The notes under the pieces were generated by a model that was not told where the DNA came from, did no database searches, and was given only the letters and a program-made list of their open reading frames with translations. A stretch of DNA of 62,464 nt, filler included, from Dugesia japonica (Eukaryota), in NCBI GenBank assembly GCA_001938525.1. It is 6 parts of 6 records of this genome, joined end to end, with 100 filler letters (N's around TTAATTAATTAA, not from the genome) between each part and the next. Parts side by side here need not be neighbours in the genome. Positions count along the whole stretch, not along the records: positions 53,467 to 62,464 come from MQRL01467074.1; 5 more parts are not named here. One strand, written 5' to 3'. Position numbers and translations under genes: made by a program. Shown here in pieces: positions 12,561 to 62,464 of the stretch. Each line of letters starts with the position of its first letter. Position 1 is the stretch's first letter.

Positions 12561-12595
12561 AATTCCTGACGAAGACAAAGTCGAAATTTAGAATA
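12561..12595 (+). ncRNA. Minimal type I hammerhead ribozyme, copy A, in a solo Penelope-like terminal repeat (~12555-12644)
   Basis: AATTC CTGACGA A GAC AAA GTC GAAA TTTA GAATA: intact core, 3-bp stem II, 4-bp stem I. Downstream ATCGAAGTTTATATTTTAATGAA matches the other copies. Confidence 0.7.
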
Positions 12596-53466: not shown

Positions 53467-54759
53467 TGATATTTGACATAGATATTTCATTAAATTGCAT
53501 GAGAATTTTCATCAAGTCATATAATTATTAATAAATATTAAGTTCGAACATTCATACGCTTATTTAATTAAGACTTATACAAAATAATTTTATAATACAT
53601 GCACACTTTTCCAAAAGACAGAATTTTGATATATTTACATGAACTTTAATAAATATACACTGATTAGCTGTAAAAGAAAGGTACTTACCACTGAACCATC
53701 TATTCTATAAAACGTTTTCAATGATCATTATTAATACAGATAAAAACCATCAATCTTTGTCATCAATGTAATAAATCGAAAAACAAGTGTAAAATAAGTG
53801 ATCAATCAGTGAATTTTAACCTAACACTGAGATTTCAAAAATAAATTTTTATTCTTAAAATTGGTCAACAAAGTGTCTTTTCGATAGAGAATATTTCTAT
53901 CGTTACGAATAACATGATTAAAAATCGCAAATCTTTATCCTTGATGAAATAAAATGAAAAATAAGTACTTACTATAGATTGCTTTCCTGTAATATTAAAT
54001 GATGGATGATCCCCGAAAAATATTAAACTTAAAATTTGATGCATGAAGTGAATGGATTATTTAGAATATATAGTGAGATGAACGGGTTAATTACTTGTTT
54101 TAAAATTAGGATGTCTATTTTCAAAAAAACTTTTACTATATTAAGGCGAAAATGCGTGAACAATTAACCTGTCTATTTGAATTTATTGGTTGTAAAGTGT
54201 GATTCAGTGTGAATTATAGAGCTGAATATATGGAATAATTGATAAAAAGATTAAACCATTAATTGGACGATCGATGGATAAATGATTTGAAAGGGTAATT
54301 GAACAGGTTCAAACTAATGAACGCCTTATAAAAACATAAAATAAAATAAATGAAATTAATTTATTAAAATCTAGTTGCTCCACCTAGAATGTTAAATTTG
54401 AAATCCTTGTTTCTACTTAATAATTATATGTATGAACTAGTGGGTCATGAATCTTGATGTCACTTGACAGTATTAGAATCAATAATTTCTATGATTATGA
54501 TTTCTTTGAATACTGCTAGAATGTCACGGGAGTGTCATTCACATTGCACTCCAATTGTACATGTAATAGACTCATACTATGTATGCAATACATCAGATTA
54601 TACTTTTATTACAAAATATAGTATGATTGAAAAGTTTATATATATATAATTACTTTAGAAAACAGTATTAATTTTAATATTAATAAATGTAAATAAATCA
54701 TATTTTACAAATATTTATTTTTTAATTAAAAAATAGTGCTTATCGATATTCATATTTAG

Positions 54760-57700
54760 TCAGTTATTATAAGGACAACAGAAAGAAATGTTAATGCATT
54801 GTTTGAAGTAAAAAACATCTTAAATAAATTGCGAACACAGTACAAACCCATTATTCAATCTGGACTTAAGCCGTTTATTCAACCAAATTTAGCAAAGATT
54901 TACAACACAACAAATAGTACTGATGAAAAATATACAGGAATTAATCTTGGTGAAATAGGTGAATTTTTTAATAGGTTTCAAAATAATTTTTTACCAGCTC
55001 AATATTTTCCGTCGGTCAAAGTGGACAAATTTGATGATATTGATAAACAGAAACAACCAAATTATTTACTGTCCAATGAGAATGATCCAGTTTCAGATCT
55101 AAAGTCTACAACAACAATTTCTAGCAACATGACAATGCAAATTGACAATGGATTGAATTTAGGAAAACAAATGAATATAGCTAAAATAACTTCACTGTTG
55201 GCATCCCAAAGAAATATAAATCCATCGGGTAGAAAATTTTTCATATAAAATAAAGTTGATTCAATTAAATTATTATTTATTATTTTCTATCTGACGACTC
55301 AATCATATTAATAATAATTTTTGATTATAGGAAAATATTAATAAACAACCAATTAATTTTTTTAGTTTTCAAAATATTTTACGAACATTAAAAATCTATT
55401 TTGAGGAAAAAATAATTGCCAGAAATTTAACTAATAAATATATATTACAATTGCAATTATTGCGAGAATAATTGTTGGACATAACCATTGATCGTTTTAT
55501 AGAATTCATTTAATATAAAAGCTTTGATGAAAATTGTGGTTTTTATTATTGATATTGGATAAAAATTCGATATCAATAACAAAAACCAAAATTTTGGTCA
55601 AAGCTTTTATATNNNNNNNNNNNNNNNNNNNTGTAATTTTAAAAGAAACAATAATATCAAGGTTTCTGAAAGATAGATTATTAAAATTAATTATTATTTT
55701 AATTATTATTTGAAACGAATAAGTATTCAATAAACTAGAATTTATGATCATGAGGTGATTGAGAAACAGGCATTTTATGCAGTAGAATTTCTGAGAAATC
55801 TTTCTTCTGTTGAACAAAAGAAAGCCGAATTTAAAGTTATAAGACGTGCTCTAGAATGACAAGTTAGATGTGGTAATTGTTCTATTTATATGGTTCCTGA
55901 ACTAGGAACAAGAAACATTTCGTGTTTTTTTTATGAACAAAAATGAATTGTTTTTTGTTGAGTGTCGGTCTGGTGCATGCAATTTAGAATGCTTTTTAAA
56001 TTTTATTAATTGCTTTAAATAACCAAATTAGCAAAACATGACATCGAAAATACTTCTCATCTAAATATTGCTGTGAGAAAAGGAGTATTGATGATAAAAG
56101 GATTGAAAATATTGATAATTATTTGTGGTATCTACAGATTTTCCTCCATTTTAAAACCTGATAGAAAATTTAATCTTCAAATAGAAAGAATAGTTTCTGG
56201 AGCTGATTAACAATGGAAACCAAATTATAAAATTAGTTCTATCGACAGTGCTTGATTTTATCGCCACATGTTAAGCAATATTTATTAATACATAATAATA
56301 AAAAAAATAATAATAATAATAAAAATAATATTTTTTTACAATTGCAATTATTGCGAGAATAATTGTTGGAGAATAATTGATCGTTTTATAGAATTCATTT
56401 CTAATTAAAGCTTCGATCAAAATTTTTGTTTTTTGATAACAATAAAAAAAATCAAAAATTTTGATCGAAGTAATAATAATAATAATAATAATCCATCATA
56501 ATAATCATTCATATTAATAATAATAATCATATTAGTCATAATCATTATCAATCAGAATTATATTCAGAATAAATATAAATAATTCATAATTAATGATATA
56601 ATTCACTTTAAATGAATAATTAATTCTTATCGAAATTGCATTCATGAACAATTCAAAAATATAAATTGGTGAATGAAATGAAACACAATAGAAAATTAAA
56701 TAAATTACGCAATTATTTGCAGAATTGTTTCTTATAAATGAATATTAAAATCATTTGTATGTATAACATTAAAGAAGCAATGAAATAATTAAAGTTTTAA
56801 AAAATAAATTATGTGAACTTAAATTATATTTTATCTAGGACATTTTCTTATAAACCAACAATCTATCAATAACAAAGATCACATGAATTGTTTAAATTTA
56901 ACCAATGGAAATCAATCAATAATTTCTATGATTGAGTTAGTTTATATATCTACTTTTTTATTTCATTAATAATAGAAATGTAAATAATCACGTAAATAAA
57001 GAAATGGAATCAAACTTATTTTCAAATTCAATCGATTTTACACCATTAAATAATATTAATTTGAACAATACTGATTGGAGAGCCCCAGGAGCTGAATATT
57101 CAGCAAAACAAAGAGAATTAAAACGATCAATATGTAACTCACCAATCAGTTCAGGATCAGATGGNAACAGACAATTACAAGGAATTAATTTTGTTCAGTA
57201 AGATTTTATTTGCATATCTTATTATACAGAGTAAATGTTTAAGTAAAAATGTTTTAAAATTTAAAAAAGCCAATTGAAAATTTTTAATTTCAATTTGAAA
57301 TTAAATTTAATTAAAAAAGGTGAATTTGTTTAAATAATAGTTCATCTTTTTTTATCTGACTTTAACTTCATGGATTTATTTAGTTTTGATGATTTAAATA
57401 TTCAAACGTCAATGGTCATTTTCTCTCACACTCTCAATGAGGTAATAACGTTAAAATTCGAATTCAGATTCAAATTAAGATATATTATGACAGATATTAA
57501 TTTAAAATGACTAAATAAATTTGTAAAAAAATTTTTGCTTTTGTTTTTAAAAATTTTTTCATTTGAATATTTTTAGATGAGTCTAAGATGCAACCGTTAA
57601 ATTTAAAAGAATATTTAAATTCATTAAATGAAATATATTTATATATATAGTTTAACAATTGCAATTATTGCGAGAATAATTGTTGGACATAACCATTGAT

Positions 57701-60146
57701 CGTTTTGTAGAATTCATTTAATATAAAAGCTTTGATCAAAATTTAGGTTTTATTTATTGATATTGGATAACAATTCGATATTTCGACCTTGTCTTCGTCA
57801 TGAATTGACTTTTTAAAAGTCAATTTTAAAGTCTTTAATGAAAAAGTGAATTCCTGACGAAAACAAGGTTGAAATATCGAATTGTTATCTAATATCAATA
57901 AATAAAACCTAAATTTTGATCAAAGCTTTTATATTAAATGAATTCTATATAGTTTAAAATCATTTAAATTAATTCCGAAAACTAAAATTTATAAATCTTT
58001 GAAACTTTCGAAATTTTAGTTAAATGTATTAAATGAATAGGGTAAATATGTATTGTTAATTAAAAATTTAACTGATCGAATATACTATTGATTCAATATT
58101 GTTTGCAAATAAACTTAAACAATTTGATAATGCCATATGTTACAATTATATTATACGAAATGTTGGTAAGAGTTATTGAATAAAGGGATTCCTTTGTAAC
58201 TACTACATGATAGCAGTTCATAGAGATGCCTAATTGTTCAAGTGCGTTGAAAATGTGAATTATTTTAATACATTAGCAACAAATGCTGCAATTTTTACGT
58301 GATCGCTCAAAGACACGGACATAATTATTACGGACGGATAAGACCATGACTTTAAAATCGTGTTATAAATAATTCAAAAAAGAAAGACTTTTGAATTAAG
58401 TAGCTGTTAATAAGTGTAAAGAAAGCTTAAGAATATTGAAATGTACTAATATTTGTTTTCGTATATCGATTAAAATGTTTTGAAAAAATATGACTGTATT
58501 TAATGAAATTTTAATACACATCACCATCTTTAAAACATACAGCAGACAACTCAATGTTTCTTGTTCGTTATCCAGGAACAGCATGAATAGCACGATTAAC
58601 ACGTTTCAAATGATCCTTTTTAAGAATGCATCATAACTTCAAATCTGGCCTCATAGATAAGAATTTTTTTTACCACTAAAGGAAGAATTCTCAATAATTC
58701 TGCCACGTAATTGCTTGTTTCTAAAGCATCTAAAGATCATATTTTCTGACTGAACGAAGACTTATTCGTTTCAAAGAATAAGAAAAACATTTCAACAATA
58801 TATCAATGGTTTTTGATATAGTAAATCTTGTAATTTTTATAAGGAATCCTCCCACAATAGTATTTTTCTTGGACTTCAATCACCACATTTTATTCACCTG
58901 ATTCTCTTTGATATATACCAGTTGTTGCGAATTCTAAATCCGCATGTATTCTACTTATCCATTAATATAATTTGGAAAAAAATCATTAAATATTTTACAA
59001 CTTAGTTTTAATCGAAAAAATTGTTTCTTTTTAATCCATAAATGAAAAAATCATGTTATGAAAAACTTTACAAATATTACAAAATAATCAAGTTTTATTA
59101 TTTCTGCTATTCACTTAATAAATAAATAGATATGTACCACTTTGCCCATAGGCAATTTCAATGTAAATTTCTTACAAAAATCGACCCAATGTATAAAATA
59201 CGTTCACTACCTCTGGTATTTACTCTTATTATACCTTTAATAGTGTTTAAGTTCAAGCCAAAAACACAAGAAATGGCTGCTATGTTATCTCAATTCAAAT
59301 ATGAATCAATTATTATTTTTCTGTTATATTTTATTATGATGAATGTTTTATTAAAAAATTAAATAAAAAATTTCTATTCCAGCTAAATTATATTATCAAG
59401 TATATTTTCAACAAATTAATAATTTGCGGTTTTAATTAATTTGACTAATAAATGACAAAAAAATTAAATTGAATGACAAATATTGTGTTTATTGTTANNN
59501 NNNNNNNNNNNNNNNNNNNNNNNNNNNNNNNNNNNNNNNNNNNNNNNNNNNNNNNNNNNNNNNNNNNNNNNAAATAATGAAAATCATAATCCCATTAATG
59601 GAAATTTGGATAATAATATGGATAATGGTTAAGAGTTTTTTTTGTTTGTTGGTAATATATTAAATTTTTTTAGTTAACAAAAATCATAATGATGAAAATA
59701 ATTATAAACAACAATTTTATGATGGTTTTATTAATCGGACAAATATGGATATAGATGGAAATTCTTCATTTAACAAAAATGATTTACTAAATAATTCTTG
59801 CGATAATGTAGTTAAAATACTTACAAATCTCGATTTAACTCGATTTGTTGATTGTTTTATTAAAAATGAAGTGAGAAATATTTATTAAAATTAAATTCTT
59901 CAAAACTTTTCCTAATATTTAGGTTGACTTTGATACATTTTGTAGTTTAAGCGAAGACGATTTAAAGGAACTTGGTGTTAATACATTTGGAGCCAGAAGG
60001 AAACTAGTATTAGCTATAAATGGTTTGTATTGATTTCATTTAAATTACAATTATTGAGAAAAATAGAAATTGGGTTGTAACATAATTTTCCTTTATTTTT
60101 TAATAATGAATTAAACACTTTTTTAGAAAAATTCATTTTAGAATAA
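54760..60146 (+). CDS. BicC: Bicaudal-C homolog, 3' part: exons 54760-55228, 56839-56935, 56976-57197, (gap)-59627, 59674-59870, 59923-60022, probable last exon 60127-60146
   Basis: SVIIRTTERNVNALFEVKNIL matches the end of the BicC KH-like region; DWRAPGAE matches the conserved (K/R)APGxE motif; C-terminal SAM domain LTNLDLTRFVDCFIKNE|VDFDTFCSLSEDDLKELGVNTFGARRKLVLAI. Splice phases are compatible wherever both ends are visible. Confidence 0.85.
55448..55612. mobile_element. Fold-back derivative of the Penelope-like terminal repeat, ribozyme core deleted
   Basis: Starts with the family end CAATTGCAATTATTGCGAGAATAATTGTTGG and turns round at TTCGATATCAAT into an inverted arm. Confidence 0.8.
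55700..55930 (-). mobile_element. Possible Tc1-type transposase relic
   Basis: Minus-strand TCHSRAR and PVSQSP resemble DNAPCH and WPxxSPDLN. Very degenerate. Confidence 0.25.
56339..56470. mobile_element. Shorter fold-back derivative of the same family, in an (AAT)n tract
   Basis: Same CAATTGCAATTATTGCGAGAAT end; hairpin CTTCGATCAAAATTTTTG / CAAAAATTTTGATCGAAG. Confidence 0.8.
57772..57806 (-). ncRNA. Minimal hammerhead ribozyme, copy D (C3>A, probably impaired)
   Basis: Reverse complement reads AATTC ATGACGA A GAC AAG GTC GAAA TATC GAATT. Confidence 0.6.
57849..57883 (+). ncRNA. Minimal hammerhead ribozyme, copy E (core intact, all stems paired)
   Basis: AATTC CTGACGA A AAC AAG GTT GAAA TATC GAATT; predicted cleavage after AUC at 57878; stem III reduced to palindromic ATAT. 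Confidence 0.75.
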
Positions 60147-61809
60147 TAACAAGGCAATCAATAATATAATCTCCATCATTATTTATGACATATTTCACAT
60201 TTCTACCATACTATCAATACTTTTACACTAGAAGGCCTAATTCACTAGGTCTCGTCTCGAATAACTTTCATTGATAAANNNNNNNNNNNNNNNNNNNNNN
60301 NNNNNNNNNNNNNNNNNNNNNNNNNNNNNNNNNNNNNNNNNNNNNNNNNNNNNNNNNNNNNNNNNNNNNNNNNNNNNNNNNNNNGTATTTTTATCTAAAA
60401 GATTTAAATAAAATTTACAAAAAATTTCTGAAATTTGGTAGATCACAAAAAGAAATATCAAATGATATTTTTAATTTTTAATAATACAAATGGTGTGGTT
60501 AAACAAACTACAATTTTCAGTAAAAAATAATATCACGGCAAATTACGTTACAACCCAATATAAGAAATCAAAACTACTTTTGATAAAATAAGATTTGGTT
60601 TTAAAACATGATTCATACAAATTCAATTTCAAAAGGTGCGTGTAATTGGAATTTATTGATTTAATTAATAGTAAATTATTCATTTGAATACGTAAATGAT
60701 ATTGACTATTTTCAGTATTTTTATATTATTTTATTTAATTATAAAAATAGAAACAAATTCGTAAGATTAATTTTCTTGAAAATGGTTTAAAATAATGCGT
60801 GAAATGTAAATATTCATATTCTGTAATTTTAACAATTTTAATATTATCAACAACTTGTGAAGAATTAAATTAACCAATATTTTAATTTATATGTTAAGTT
60901 TAGAATTCTTTTTTTTAAAAGTAGTATATGAATCAAGTTTTTAATAGTTTCATTATTAGAATGTATCGATTTCAATAATTTTAATTAAATCAACAAAATG
61001 AATACAGATCGTTGTCATCATGATTGTAGTAGTTATCCATGTATGATAAAATTAATTTTTCAAAGTCAAAATAAAACAATCCTCATAAAGTTATTAATTT
61101 ATTAACAATTTATCAATTTCAATCTTTTAATAAATTTTGATTAATTATAGATGTATGAATATAAATAAATTCATTTAGATTAAAAACTAGTAGAAAAATA
61201 TAGATGTTAAATTAATAAAGTCAATGCTTTACATCAAATTATCCTATTTCTAACCAGGTGTAGAAAAAAATTATTTTCTTGTTAGCAGTAGGCAAATTAT
61301 CTAATTCACTTTCCAGAGATAAATTAATTAAATTGAATCTTTAAAAATTTTATTAACAATACTCTTAACATTTTTGAAAATCCCGGATAGTAAAACAAAT
61401 ATATTATTTTATTATTGATAAATCTTAATGACTATAGAAACAATATAAAATTTATTTAAATTATTTTAAGAAATAATGATTTCGATGATTTACAACTGGG
61501 AGTTTCTTTGTAAACTACTAACACTTAAAATGTGTTTTTAAAAACACTGATATTTTTATAAATTTGCATCGAATAGATTCATAGTATAAGAGGTTTGAAT
61601 ATACGCATTTTGGCTGAAATAAGTGTCCATAATGGAAGTAAGTTAAAAATTAAGAGAATCAATGAAATAGTATACTATGATGCAATATACTCGAATATTT
61701 ATATTATTTTAATGTTTGATAAATTAAAGATATTTATTTAACATGACAATTTTCATAATAGTCAGAATAGTCTTCTTTTTTTTGATTCCTTCTCTCTTTT
61801 AATGAATTT

Positions 61810-61904
61810 TCCAATACAGTTACTCGAGAATTATACACCCATCGGGTTATCGAGTTACTCGAAATTTGCTCATTACTCGAGATACCCGGGACTGTATTCC
61901 CTAA
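61810..61904. mobile_element. Small hAT-like MITE with CTCGAG subterminal motifs
   Basis: AATACAGT...ACTGTATT inverted ends and repeated TACTCGA; related-looking motif clusters at 48060-48115 and 52855-52960. Confidence 0.4.
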
Positions 61905-62464
61905 TTATCATAATTCAGTTCTTTTAAAAAAAATTAGTTTTGGAGAACCTGCTTTAGATGATTGGTGACCACCCTTTGATGAAGTTGTGAGTATTGTGAG
62001 TAACTACCACAGGCTGTAGGACAGTAATTTCTTTTTACTGGCTTCGGCCATATCGCATCATATTGAATAAATGACTGATTTCAATTATGTCTCTTATAAC
62101 AGAGACTATCAAATTTTCATTCCATCGAACGATGCATAACACATCTTCACCGCATGATGCACATTAAAAAGTATCAAATTACATTAAGTTTTTGTTCACA
62201 ATGTTTATCAATTTCATTATCTTCGAAAATTTGCCATCTTTATTCAAATTCGTATTACATGAGTGTATGAAACGTTTTATTTTTTTGAAGTTGGACACTG
62301 CCAAAGGTTCGCTAGGGCACCATTAAATTTATCGCTAGTATTTCGCATGATAACTGAGAAATTTTTAATGACTTTTTGTTTATCTATAAGATCTGTACTA
62401 GTAAAAAGAAACAACAAAAATTAATTTAAAATACTCTTTCTAATATAATTTGAACAGTCATAAC

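What the first reader, a model, noticed from the sequence alone, without database searches (positions are those of the whole stretch)
57849..57883. 35-nt ultra-minimal hammerhead ribozyme family with five copies and structural support
Seen: copies at 12561(+), 49357(-), 49987(+), 57772(-) and 57849(+) give AAUUC-CUGAYGA-A-RAC-NAR-GUY-GAAA-UAUH-GAAUU. Stem I is 5 bp. Stem II is 3 bp with a variable triloop and a G-C to A-U double change in copy E, with copy C as the mismatched intermediate. Stem III is reduced to palindromic AUAU. Established: the CUGANGA/GAAA/NUH core, and dimer-dependent cleavage by minimal Penelope-associated hammerheads through palindromic stem III. Inference: cleavage after 57878 needs two RNAs or tandem copies. 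Caveats: the class is already known, the covariation is one pair and could be AT-biased mutation, and A10.1-U11.1 is usually weaker than G-C.
Basis: partly seen in the sequence, partly recalled or inferred. Interest (0 to 1): 0.8.

Follow-up and report, generated by a model that had tools for sequence, protein, structure and literature searches.

The report
Hammerhead-like relic in a Penelope-like insertion
The 35-base hammerhead-ribozyme-like motif is really there and is unlikely to be chance, but it lies in both arms of one 290-bp mobile-element insertion built like a truncated Penelope-like retrotransposon, a known home of such minimal hammerheads, and these two copies look like decaying relics, not working ribozymes.

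Summary
The motif at 57849-57883(+) fits a minimal type-I hammerhead exactly: 5-bp helix I, CUGACGA, one extra A, 3-bp helix II with a triloop, GAAA, AUAU in place of helix III, and C17. A relaxed descriptor finds only this site and nothing in 2000 shuffles or 20 Mb of simulated sequence. The two copies are not independent. They are the arms of one 107-nt inverted repeat inside a 290-bp insertion (57656-57945) flanked by a 12-bp target-site duplication. The termini are not inverted repeats, and a 52-nt extension ("tail") sits at one end only. Two shorter relatives lie upstream and share that end but lack the motif. This layout matches published hallmarks of Penelope-like element (PLE) insertions, and the motif matches several features of the published PLE "min-HHR". 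No RT or endonuclease remnant, no same-sense partner copy and no Rfam hit were found. The predicted hammerhead fold is unstable, and a read-through transcript would form a -156 kcal/mol hairpin. Verdict: probably a new member of a known class, and probably inactive at this locus. Only two of the five claimed copies could be examined.

The parts
57849..57883 (+). Hammerhead-like motif, copy E. The core is intact: C3-A9 at 57854-57860, an extra A at 57861, helix II at 57862-57864/57868-57870, G12-A14 at 57871-57873, AUAU at 57874-57877 and C17 at 57878. The predicted cut lies between 57878 and 57879. The closing pair of helix II is A-U.
   Evidence: (only descriptor hit)
57772..57806 (-). Hammerhead-like motif, copy D. 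It has the same architecture with G10.1-C11.1, but position 3 is A (57801), which is expected to inactivate it. The predicted cut would lie between 57777 and 57776.
   Evidence: (1 mismatch)
57708..57814 (-). Left arm of the inverted repeat. In my reading this is the sense copy of the element on the minus strand, holding motif D plus 64 nt of body.
   Evidence: (I1: 107-nt arms, 95%)
57815..57840 (.). 26-nt spacer or junction between the two arms. It contains a short fold-back duplication of the arm end.
57841..57947 (+). Right arm of the inverted repeat. This is the inverted partner copy holding motif E. It ends without the 52-nt extension.
57656..57707 (-). 52-nt extension ('tail') present at one end only. 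It contains a stem-loop and is the end shared by all three family copies, so it is the inferred 3' end of the element RNA.
   Evidence: (D2-D4)
57644..57655 (.). Left copy of the 12-bp target-site duplication TATATAGTTTAA.
57946..57957 (.). Right copy of the 12-bp target-site duplication. Its first two bases can also be read as the end of the right arm.
55446..55612 (-). Family copy 1. It has the same tail and body, 48-nt arms and a 4-nt spacer, and no hammerhead core. Its long arm stops 0-5 nt upstream of the predicted cut site. Its right end runs into an N run.
   Evidence: (I5, D2)
56337..56470 (-). Family copy 2. It has the same tail, about 36-nt arms and no hammerhead core. It is more diverged and lies inside a (TAA)n microsatellite.
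   Evidence: (I8, D3, D4)

Best explanation
The motif is a Penelope-like-element (PLE) type minimal hammerhead ('min-HHR') carried by a very short, non-autonomous or heavily 5'-truncated PLE-like retroelement insertion at 57656-57945. Inferred life cycle, from published PLE biology: in a source element, transcripts carrying two same-sense copies pair their AUAU segments (15.1-16.1) into a 4-bp helix III. This double hammerhead cuts 3' of C17. The PLE reverse transcriptase/GIY-YIG endonuclease then primes cDNA on both strands of an AT-rich target, starting at one of two sites about 70 or 120 nt downstream of the ribozyme. That would leave what is seen here: two head-to-head copies forming the 107-nt inverted repeat, an extension at one end only, and a 12-bp target-site duplication. 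Shown: the motif, the palindrome, the duplication, the asymmetric termini and the family of three copies. Inferred: PLE ancestry, minus strand as sense, and the mechanism. At this locus the motif is probably a fossil. The minus copy has lost C3, the plus copy has a weakened helix II (A-U in place of G-C), no partner copy is near, and read-through RNA would fold as a long hairpin.
For: Descriptor specificity: 1 real hit against 0 in 2000 shuffles and 0 in 20 Mb simulated. The exact pattern is expected 0.03 times per window.

Features matching PLE min-HHRs in PMC4209133: no helix III loop, palindromic 15.2-16.2, an unpaired nucleotide between A9 and 10.1, helix I of 4-5 bp, G10.1-C11.1 (copy D), and dual motifs on opposite strands 100-700 bp apart.

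Element hallmarks: a 12-bp direct repeat abuts both ends. The termini are not inverted repeats. Three copies share one end and differ in arm length, 107/48/36 nt. Copy 2 sits in (TAA)n.

These match PMC8557442: an inverted 5'-truncated copy adjacent at the 5' end, a tail often at one end only, and microsatellite targets. They also match PMC11167929: both target strands are cleaved and extended, there are two RT start sites downstream of the HHR cut site, start occurs in a stem-loop, and targets are AT-rich.

The motif lies on the inferred sense strand of each arm. In copy 1 the longer arm ends 0-5 nt from the predicted cut site. Copy 2 can be read as ending at +2/+3, but the scored alignment of its tail-bearing arm begins at +14.
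Against: No reverse transcriptase or GIY-YIG remnant was found in 25 ORF fragments of the piece. No Rfam hammerhead model matches, even at E<=10. Helix II has 3 bp, against 6-8 bp in described min-HHRs. The hammerhead fold is not favoured: +0.2/-2.0 kcal/mol as monomer, +5.0/-0.4 as double hammerhead, and pair probabilities are <=0.001 in single-arm RNA. No related copies were found in viral, prokaryotic or metagenome collections, so family-wide covariation could not be tested. The tail is 52 nt, against the 30-40 nt reported. The short copies could equally have arisen by slippage deletion of the palindrome centre between ATAT repeats.
Confidence: 0.6

Rival explanations
1. One reading: a working ultra-minimal hammerhead at this locus that cleaves after 57878 by pairing with a second RNA or a tandem copy through the AUAU helix III.
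For: Copy E has an intact core in the correct arrangement. Dimer-dependent cleavage is established for PLE hammerheads (PMC4209133, PMC6765202). There is one compensatory pair between copies D and E. The junction of the shorter copy 1 lies within 5 nt of the predicted cut site, and one reading of copy 2 does too.
Against: There is no second same-sense copy in the 9-kb piece, and the only other copy is antisense in any one transcript and has A3. The double-hammerhead energy is +5.0 kcal/mol for E+E. HH helices have probability <=0.001 in context. The read-through transcript forms a hairpin of -156 kcal/mol. A10.1-U11.1 replaces the conserved G-C. The motif is less conserved than the rest of the arm, 3/35 against 1/64 differences.
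Confidence: 0.1
2. A chance look-alike. The element is an unrelated short retroposon or foldback repeat, and its arm happens to contain CUGANGA and GAAA in a hammerhead-compatible frame. The palindromic AATT-rich sequence makes helix I easy to obtain.
For: No Rfam hit. No RT/EN nearby. The fold is unstable. Helix II is atypically short. One copy already lacks C3. Metagenome matches to the core-plus-spacing pattern were all coding-sequence coincidences. The scan that produced the finding looked at an unknown number of windows.
Against: The expected chance rate is about 3e-9 per position, and there were 0 hits in 2000 shuffles and in 20 Mb of simulation. Traits typical of PLE min-HHRs are present: the extra nucleotide after A9 (optional in the descriptor used here) and G10.1-C11.1 in copy D. 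The motif is on the inferred sense strand. The insertion architecture independently points to PLEs.
Confidence: 0.25
3. The relevant feature is the 240-nt near-perfect hairpin itself. It could be a MITE-like DNA transposon or a hairpin-RNA/small-RNA precursor, with the hammerhead resemblance irrelevant.
For: The hairpin has z-score -22. There are weak hits to miRNA precursor families derived from palindromic repeats.
Against: The element's termini are not inverted repeats: the left 52 nt have no counterpart on the right. This excludes a TIR transposon. All miRNA hits are far below gathering scores (35 against 75-90 bits). Hairpin processing could be a by-product, but it does not explain the shared asymmetric end or the variable arm lengths.
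Confidence: 0.05

Closest known systems
min-HHR of metazoan Penelope-like elements (Cervera & de la Pena 2014, PMC4209133; Lunse, Weinberg & Breaker 2017, cited in PMC6765202)
   Same: Type-I order of elements. Full CUGANGA/GAAA/UH core in copy E. No helix III loop, with palindromic 15.1-16.1 for dimer formation. An unpaired nucleotide between A9 and 10.1. Helix I of 5 bp. G10.1-C11.1 in copy D. Paired copies on opposite strands a short distance apart. Most genomic copies are solitary and lie in truncated elements.
   Different: Helix II is 3 bp with a triloop, against 6-8 bp. Copy E has A-U at 10.1-11.1. Copy D has A3. No PLE ORF or tandem pLTR lies in the piece. The Lunse paper itself was not available to read.
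PLE insertion architecture (Craig et al. 2021, PMC8557442; Anolis Poseidon PAc in vitro, PMC11167929)
   Same: An inverted 5'-truncated copy abuts the main copy. An extension ('tail') is present at one end only. Targets are AT-rich or microsatellite. There is a target-site duplication. The HHR lies roughly 70-120 nt upstream of the two alternative 3' ends, comparable to PAc, where the cut site lies about 85-92 nt upstream of the first RT start. A stem-loop sits at the 3' end.
   Different: The whole unit is only 290 bp. The tail is 52 nt, against 30-40 nt. No coding part is present. The RT start sites are inferred from genomic ends only.
Newt satellite 2 / Schistosoma Sm-alpha / metazoan non-LTR retrozyme type-I hammerheads
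   Same: Type-I hammerheads with a very short palindromic helix III that act as double hammerheads.
   Different: Those occur in tandem arrays or SINE-like units, have helix I/II loop-loop contacts and are found by Rfam Hammerhead models. Here there is no tandem array, there are no tertiary-contact loops and there is no Rfam hit.
MITEs / foldback elements
   Same: A short non-coding insertion with a long internal inverted repeat and a target-site duplication.
   Different: The termini are not inverted repeats, and one end carries a unique 52-nt segment shared by all family copies.

Membership tests
Hammerhead ribozyme (type I) | Invariant core C3 U4 G5 A6 N7 G8 A9 ... G12 A13 A14 ... A15.1-U16.1, H17 | tested here: met
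   Met in copy E at 57849-57883. Not met in copy D, where position 3 is A at 57801.
Hammerhead ribozyme (type I) | Helices I and II flank the core in the right order and can pair | tested here: met
   Helix I has 5 bp and helix II has 3 bp plus a triloop in both copies. The fold is not thermodynamically favoured.
Hammerhead ribozyme (type I) | Match to curated Rfam hammerhead covariance models | tested here: not met
   No hammerhead family appears among all matches up to E=10 in the piece. This is expected if the models require a helix III hairpin.
Hammerhead ribozyme (type I) | Site-specific self-cleavage 3' of H17 | not testable with these tools
   This needs in vitro transcription or mapping of RNA ends.
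Hammerhead ribozyme (type I) | Covariation supporting the helices across homologues | tested here: inconclusive
   Only two sequences are available. There is one double change, G-C to A-U at 10.1/11.1. The C-to-T change is at a CpG. No further homologues were found.
PLE min-HHR | No helix III loop; 15.2-16.2 palindromic so that two copies build helix III | tested here: met
   AUAU at 57874-57877, directly followed by C17.
PLE min-HHR | Unpaired nucleotide between A9 and 10.1 | tested here: met
   An A at 57861 and the equivalent position in copy D. The feature is described in PMC4209133.
PLE min-HHR | Long helix II (6-8 bp) with G10.1-C11.1 | tested here: not met
   Helix II has 3 bp. G-C is present only in copy D, and copy E has A-U.
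PLE min-HHR | A second same-sense copy in tandem or nearby for dimer formation | tested here: not met
   The pattern search with up to 2 mismatches finds only the two opposite-strand copies in the piece.
Penelope-like element | ORF with RT and GIY-YIG endonuclease between pseudo-LTRs | tested here: not met
   25 stop-free fragments scanned against Pfam gave no RT or GIY-YIG match. A heavily truncated or non-autonomous copy would lack it.
Penelope-like element | Insertion signature: adjacent inverted 5'-truncated copy, one-sided tail, target duplication, AT-rich/microsatellite target | tested here: met
   compared with PMC8557442 and PMC11167929.
MITE (TIR DNA transposon derivative) | Terminal inverted repeats at both element ends | tested here: not met
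   The left terminus (57656 onward) has no inverted counterpart at the right terminus (57945).

The most novel reading that the evidence does not exclude
This family would be the smallest natural hammerhead yet seen: about 35 nt, a 3-bp helix II and a 4-bp intermolecular helix III. It would still cleave in vivo, possibly helped by the PLE protein. The hint is that the longer arm of truncated copy 1 ends within about 5 nt of the predicted cut site, and one reading of copy 2 does too, as if HHR-cleaved RNA had served as the retrotransposition template.
Probability: 0.12. Interest if true: 0.6.

Novelty: new member of a known kind. Interest (0 to 1): 0.3.

Why it matters
Minimal hammerheads in Penelope-like elements have been known since 2014 and number in the hundreds of thousands, so the class is not new. 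Two things are useful here. First, this is a compact, fully delimited 290-bp insertion with a target duplication, head-to-head arms and a one-sided tail. It reads like a natural footprint of the two-strand priming and dual RT start sites recently shown in vitro for one PLE. Second, helix II is unusually short. If the family proved active, it would push down the lower size limit for natural hammerheads. As it stands, the locus is best treated as an annotation: a repeat with a decayed ribozyme motif.

Tried and rejected
- Rfam scan of the piece at E<=10: no hammerhead family, only sub-threshold miRNA-family hits caused by the hairpins.
- tRNA scan: none.
- Alternative genetic codes did not reveal hidden long ORFs.
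- Pfam on 25 ORF fragments: no RT/GIY-YIG.
- Collection scans for the motif (viral, prokaryotic genomes) and for the 31-nt tail: zero hits.
- The one metagenome scan, with a core-plus-spacing pattern, gave 31 loci. All are coding-sequence coincidences without helix II pairing. No covariance model or family-wide covariation test was therefore possible.
- Host identification: one homologue of the exon 54760-55245 from an unnamed Logan run, so the species is unresolved.
- MITE reading rejected because the termini are not inverted repeats.
- Tandem-repeat reading of the three copies rejected because the sequences between them are unrelated apart from low-complexity matches.
- The Lunse et al. 2017 paper could not be read.
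- My first energy evaluations used mis-sized dot-brackets and were redone.

Full report
**Observation**

The piece (53467-62464) is 18-30% G+C. It has no tRNA genes and no long ORFs under any genetic code.

It has a 5-nt helix I strand, then CUGACGA, one extra A, a 3-bp helix II closed by a triloop, GAAA, UAU, C17 at 57878, and the complementary helix I strand.

The copy at 57772-57806(-) has the same layout with G-C in place of A-U at the base of helix II.

**Is it more than chance?**

I wrote a relaxed minimal-hammerhead descriptor:
- helix I of at least 4 bp
- CUGANGA
- 0-1 extra nucleotide
- helix II of 3-8 bp with a loop of 3-8 nt
- GAAA
- a pairable 15.2/16.2
- U, then H (not G)

It finds only 57849-57883 in the piece. 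It finds nothing in 2000 dinucleotide shuffles and nothing in 20 Mb of first-order Markov sequence of the same composition. My analytic estimate is about 3e-9 per position. The exact pattern is expected 0.03 times per window. The match is therefore not a composition artefact.

**Context**

The two copies are the two arms of one inverted repeat, 57708-57814 and 57841-57947. The arms are 107 nt long and 95% complementary, with a 26-nt spacer. As RNA either strand folds into a hairpin of about 240 nt, with energies of -156 and -142 kcal/mol and z-scores of about -22.

The arms differ at five positions. Four lie in or next to the motif:
- 57848/57807
- 57854/57801 (C3)
- 57862/57793 (10.1)
- 57870/57785 (11.1, a CpG C-to-T change)

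The fifth is 57890/57765. The outer 57 nt are identical. The motif is therefore not better conserved than its surroundings.

The palindrome belongs to a discrete insertion, 57656-57945. It is flanked by the 12-bp direct repeat TATATAGTTTAA at 57644-57655 and 57946-57957.

The two termini are not inverted repeats. The left 52 nt (57656-57707) form a small stem-loop and have no counterpart on the right.

Two more family members lie upstream in the same orientation, at 55446-55612 and 56337-56470. They share the left end and the outer arm sequence. Their arms are only 48 and about 36 nt long, and they lack the hammerhead part. Copy 2 sits inside a (TAA)n microsatellite.

An invariant end paired with a variable opposite end is the pattern of a retroelement with 5' truncation. 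That places the sense strand on minus, with the 3' end at the left. Motif D then lies in sense orientation in the tail-bearing copy, and motif E in sense orientation in the inverted partner.

**Comparison with what is known**

Cervera and de la Pena (PMC4209133) defined min-HHRs in the flanking repeats of Penelope-like elements. Their features are:
- no helix III loop
- palindromic 15.2-16.2
- a conserved unpaired nucleotide between A9 and 10.1
- G10.1-C11.1
- helix I of 4-5 bp
- helix II of 6-8 bp
- very low activity, and only as dimers
- most copies solitary, in truncated elements
- some pairs on opposite strands 100-700 bp apart

The present motif shares all of these except the long helix II.

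Craig et al. (PMC8557442) describe PLE insertions as 5'-truncated. They often have an inverted 5'-truncated copy directly adjacent and a 30-40-bp tail at one end only, and they show a bias toward microsatellite targets.

The in vitro study of the Anolis Poseidon element (PMC11167929) adds four points:
- Both target strands are cleaved and extended.
- Reverse transcription starts at two adjacent internal sites in a stem-loop roughly 85-92 nt downstream of the hammerhead cut site.
- The segment between the two start sites is the 'tail'.
- Targets are AT-rich.

In the element here the two arms end 67-69 nt and 121 nt downstream of their predicted cut sites. The difference is the 52-nt one-sided extension with a stem-loop. 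The architecture therefore fits a minimal PLE-type insertion made of two head-to-head cDNAs. This is inference from resemblance. No RT or GIY-YIG remnant exists in the piece.

**Would it cleave here?**

Probably not, for five reasons:
- Copy D lacks C3.
- Copy E has A-U at 10.1-11.1.
- Nearest-neighbour energies of the hammerhead fold are +0.2 (E) and -2.0 (D) kcal/mol as monomers. As domain-swapped double hammerheads they are +5.0 (E+E) and -0.4 (D+D).
- In single-arm RNAs the hammerhead helices have pair probabilities of at most 0.001.
- No second same-sense copy exists within the 9 kb, and a read-through transcript would sequester the motif in the long hairpin.

Rfam's hammerhead models do not match at E<=10.

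**A possible trace of past activity**

In copy 1 the tail-bearing arm stops at -5 to 0 relative to the predicted cut site. The uncertainty comes from an ATAT microhomology.

Copy 2 is ambiguous. By eye, and in the plus-strand alignment, one arm can be read as stopping at +2/+3. The scored local alignment of its tail-bearing arm begins only at +14.

If both end points near the cut site held, they would be consistent with HHR-cleaved RNA having been the template. My rough estimate of that coincidence arising by chance is about 0.5%, and it was made post hoc. Slippage deletion of the palindrome centre between ATAT repeats explains copy 1 equally well. I record this as unresolved.

**The single compensatory change**

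With five arm differences, I estimate the chance that two fall on one helix pair and keep it paired at about 1-2%. One of the two is a CpG transition. If the arms came from two template RNAs, the difference may predate insertion. It is suggestive but not proof.

**Searches elsewhere**

The motif and the 31-nt tail have no match in the viral or prokaryotic genome collections. The one metagenome scan returned 31 loci that are coding-sequence coincidences. Family-wide covariation could therefore not be tested.

The host is unidentified. The exon-like ORF 54760-55245 has one relative from an unnamed sequencing run. That relative has splice-site-like borders and a weak Bicaudal-C KH-like neighbour exon, which suggests an AT-rich metazoan.

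**Verdict**

The best reading is a PLE-type minimal hammerhead preserved as a relic in a 290-bp PLE-like insertion (confidence about 0.6). A chance look-alike in an unrelated repeat remains possible (about 0.25). Activity at this locus is unlikely (about 0.1).

It is a new member of a known kind and of modest interest.

Noticed in passing
54760-55245 (+): Exon-like ORF of 162 codons with a single relative in 5.8 billion proteins (P0001, 49% identity, from Logan run SRR33002330). In that contig the homologous stretch is bordered by AG/GT splice-like sites. An upstream exon-like stretch there gives a weak KH_BICC1 hit (E 0.005). This suggests an AT-rich metazoan host and possibly a Bicaudal-C-like gene.
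   Followed up: partly
55650-55935 and 58536-58838: Diverged inverted duplication (about 65% over 300 nt, E 5e-28) bracketing the cluster of three element copies. The translations are broken by stops in both.
   Followed up: partly
55446-55612 and 56337-56470: Two shorter relatives of the element lie in the same orientation within 2.5 kb. In copy 1 the longer arm ends within about 5 nt of the predicted hammerhead cut site. Copy 2 allows a reading at +2/+3, but its scored alignment begins at +14. These ends could mark templates cleaved by the ribozyme or slippage deletions of the palindrome centre.
   Followed up: partly
56471-56495 and 56300-56335: (TAA)n / A-rich microsatellite on both sides of copy 2, so the element appears to have inserted into a microsatellite.
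   Followed up: no
55613-55631, 57165, 59498-59571, 60279-60384: N runs inside the piece. The first abuts the right arm of copy 1, so its right end and any target duplication cannot be read. The N runs were left as they are.
   Followed up: no
55521-55604, 56411-56470, 57779-57876: Rfam miRNA-precursor families (mir-548, mir-4679, mir-4798, mir-1256) hit the three hairpins at 30-39 bits, against gathering scores of 70-90. These are generic hairpin matches, not miRNA genes.
   Followed up: yes
L006, L019, L020, L028 (metagenome loci): A repeated coding-like unit (spacing about 222 nt) in marine metagenome or transcriptome contigs contains GAATTCCTGACGAAAAC...GAAATATTGAA. It mimics the core spacing but has no helix II pairing, so it is not related to the element.
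   Followed up: partly
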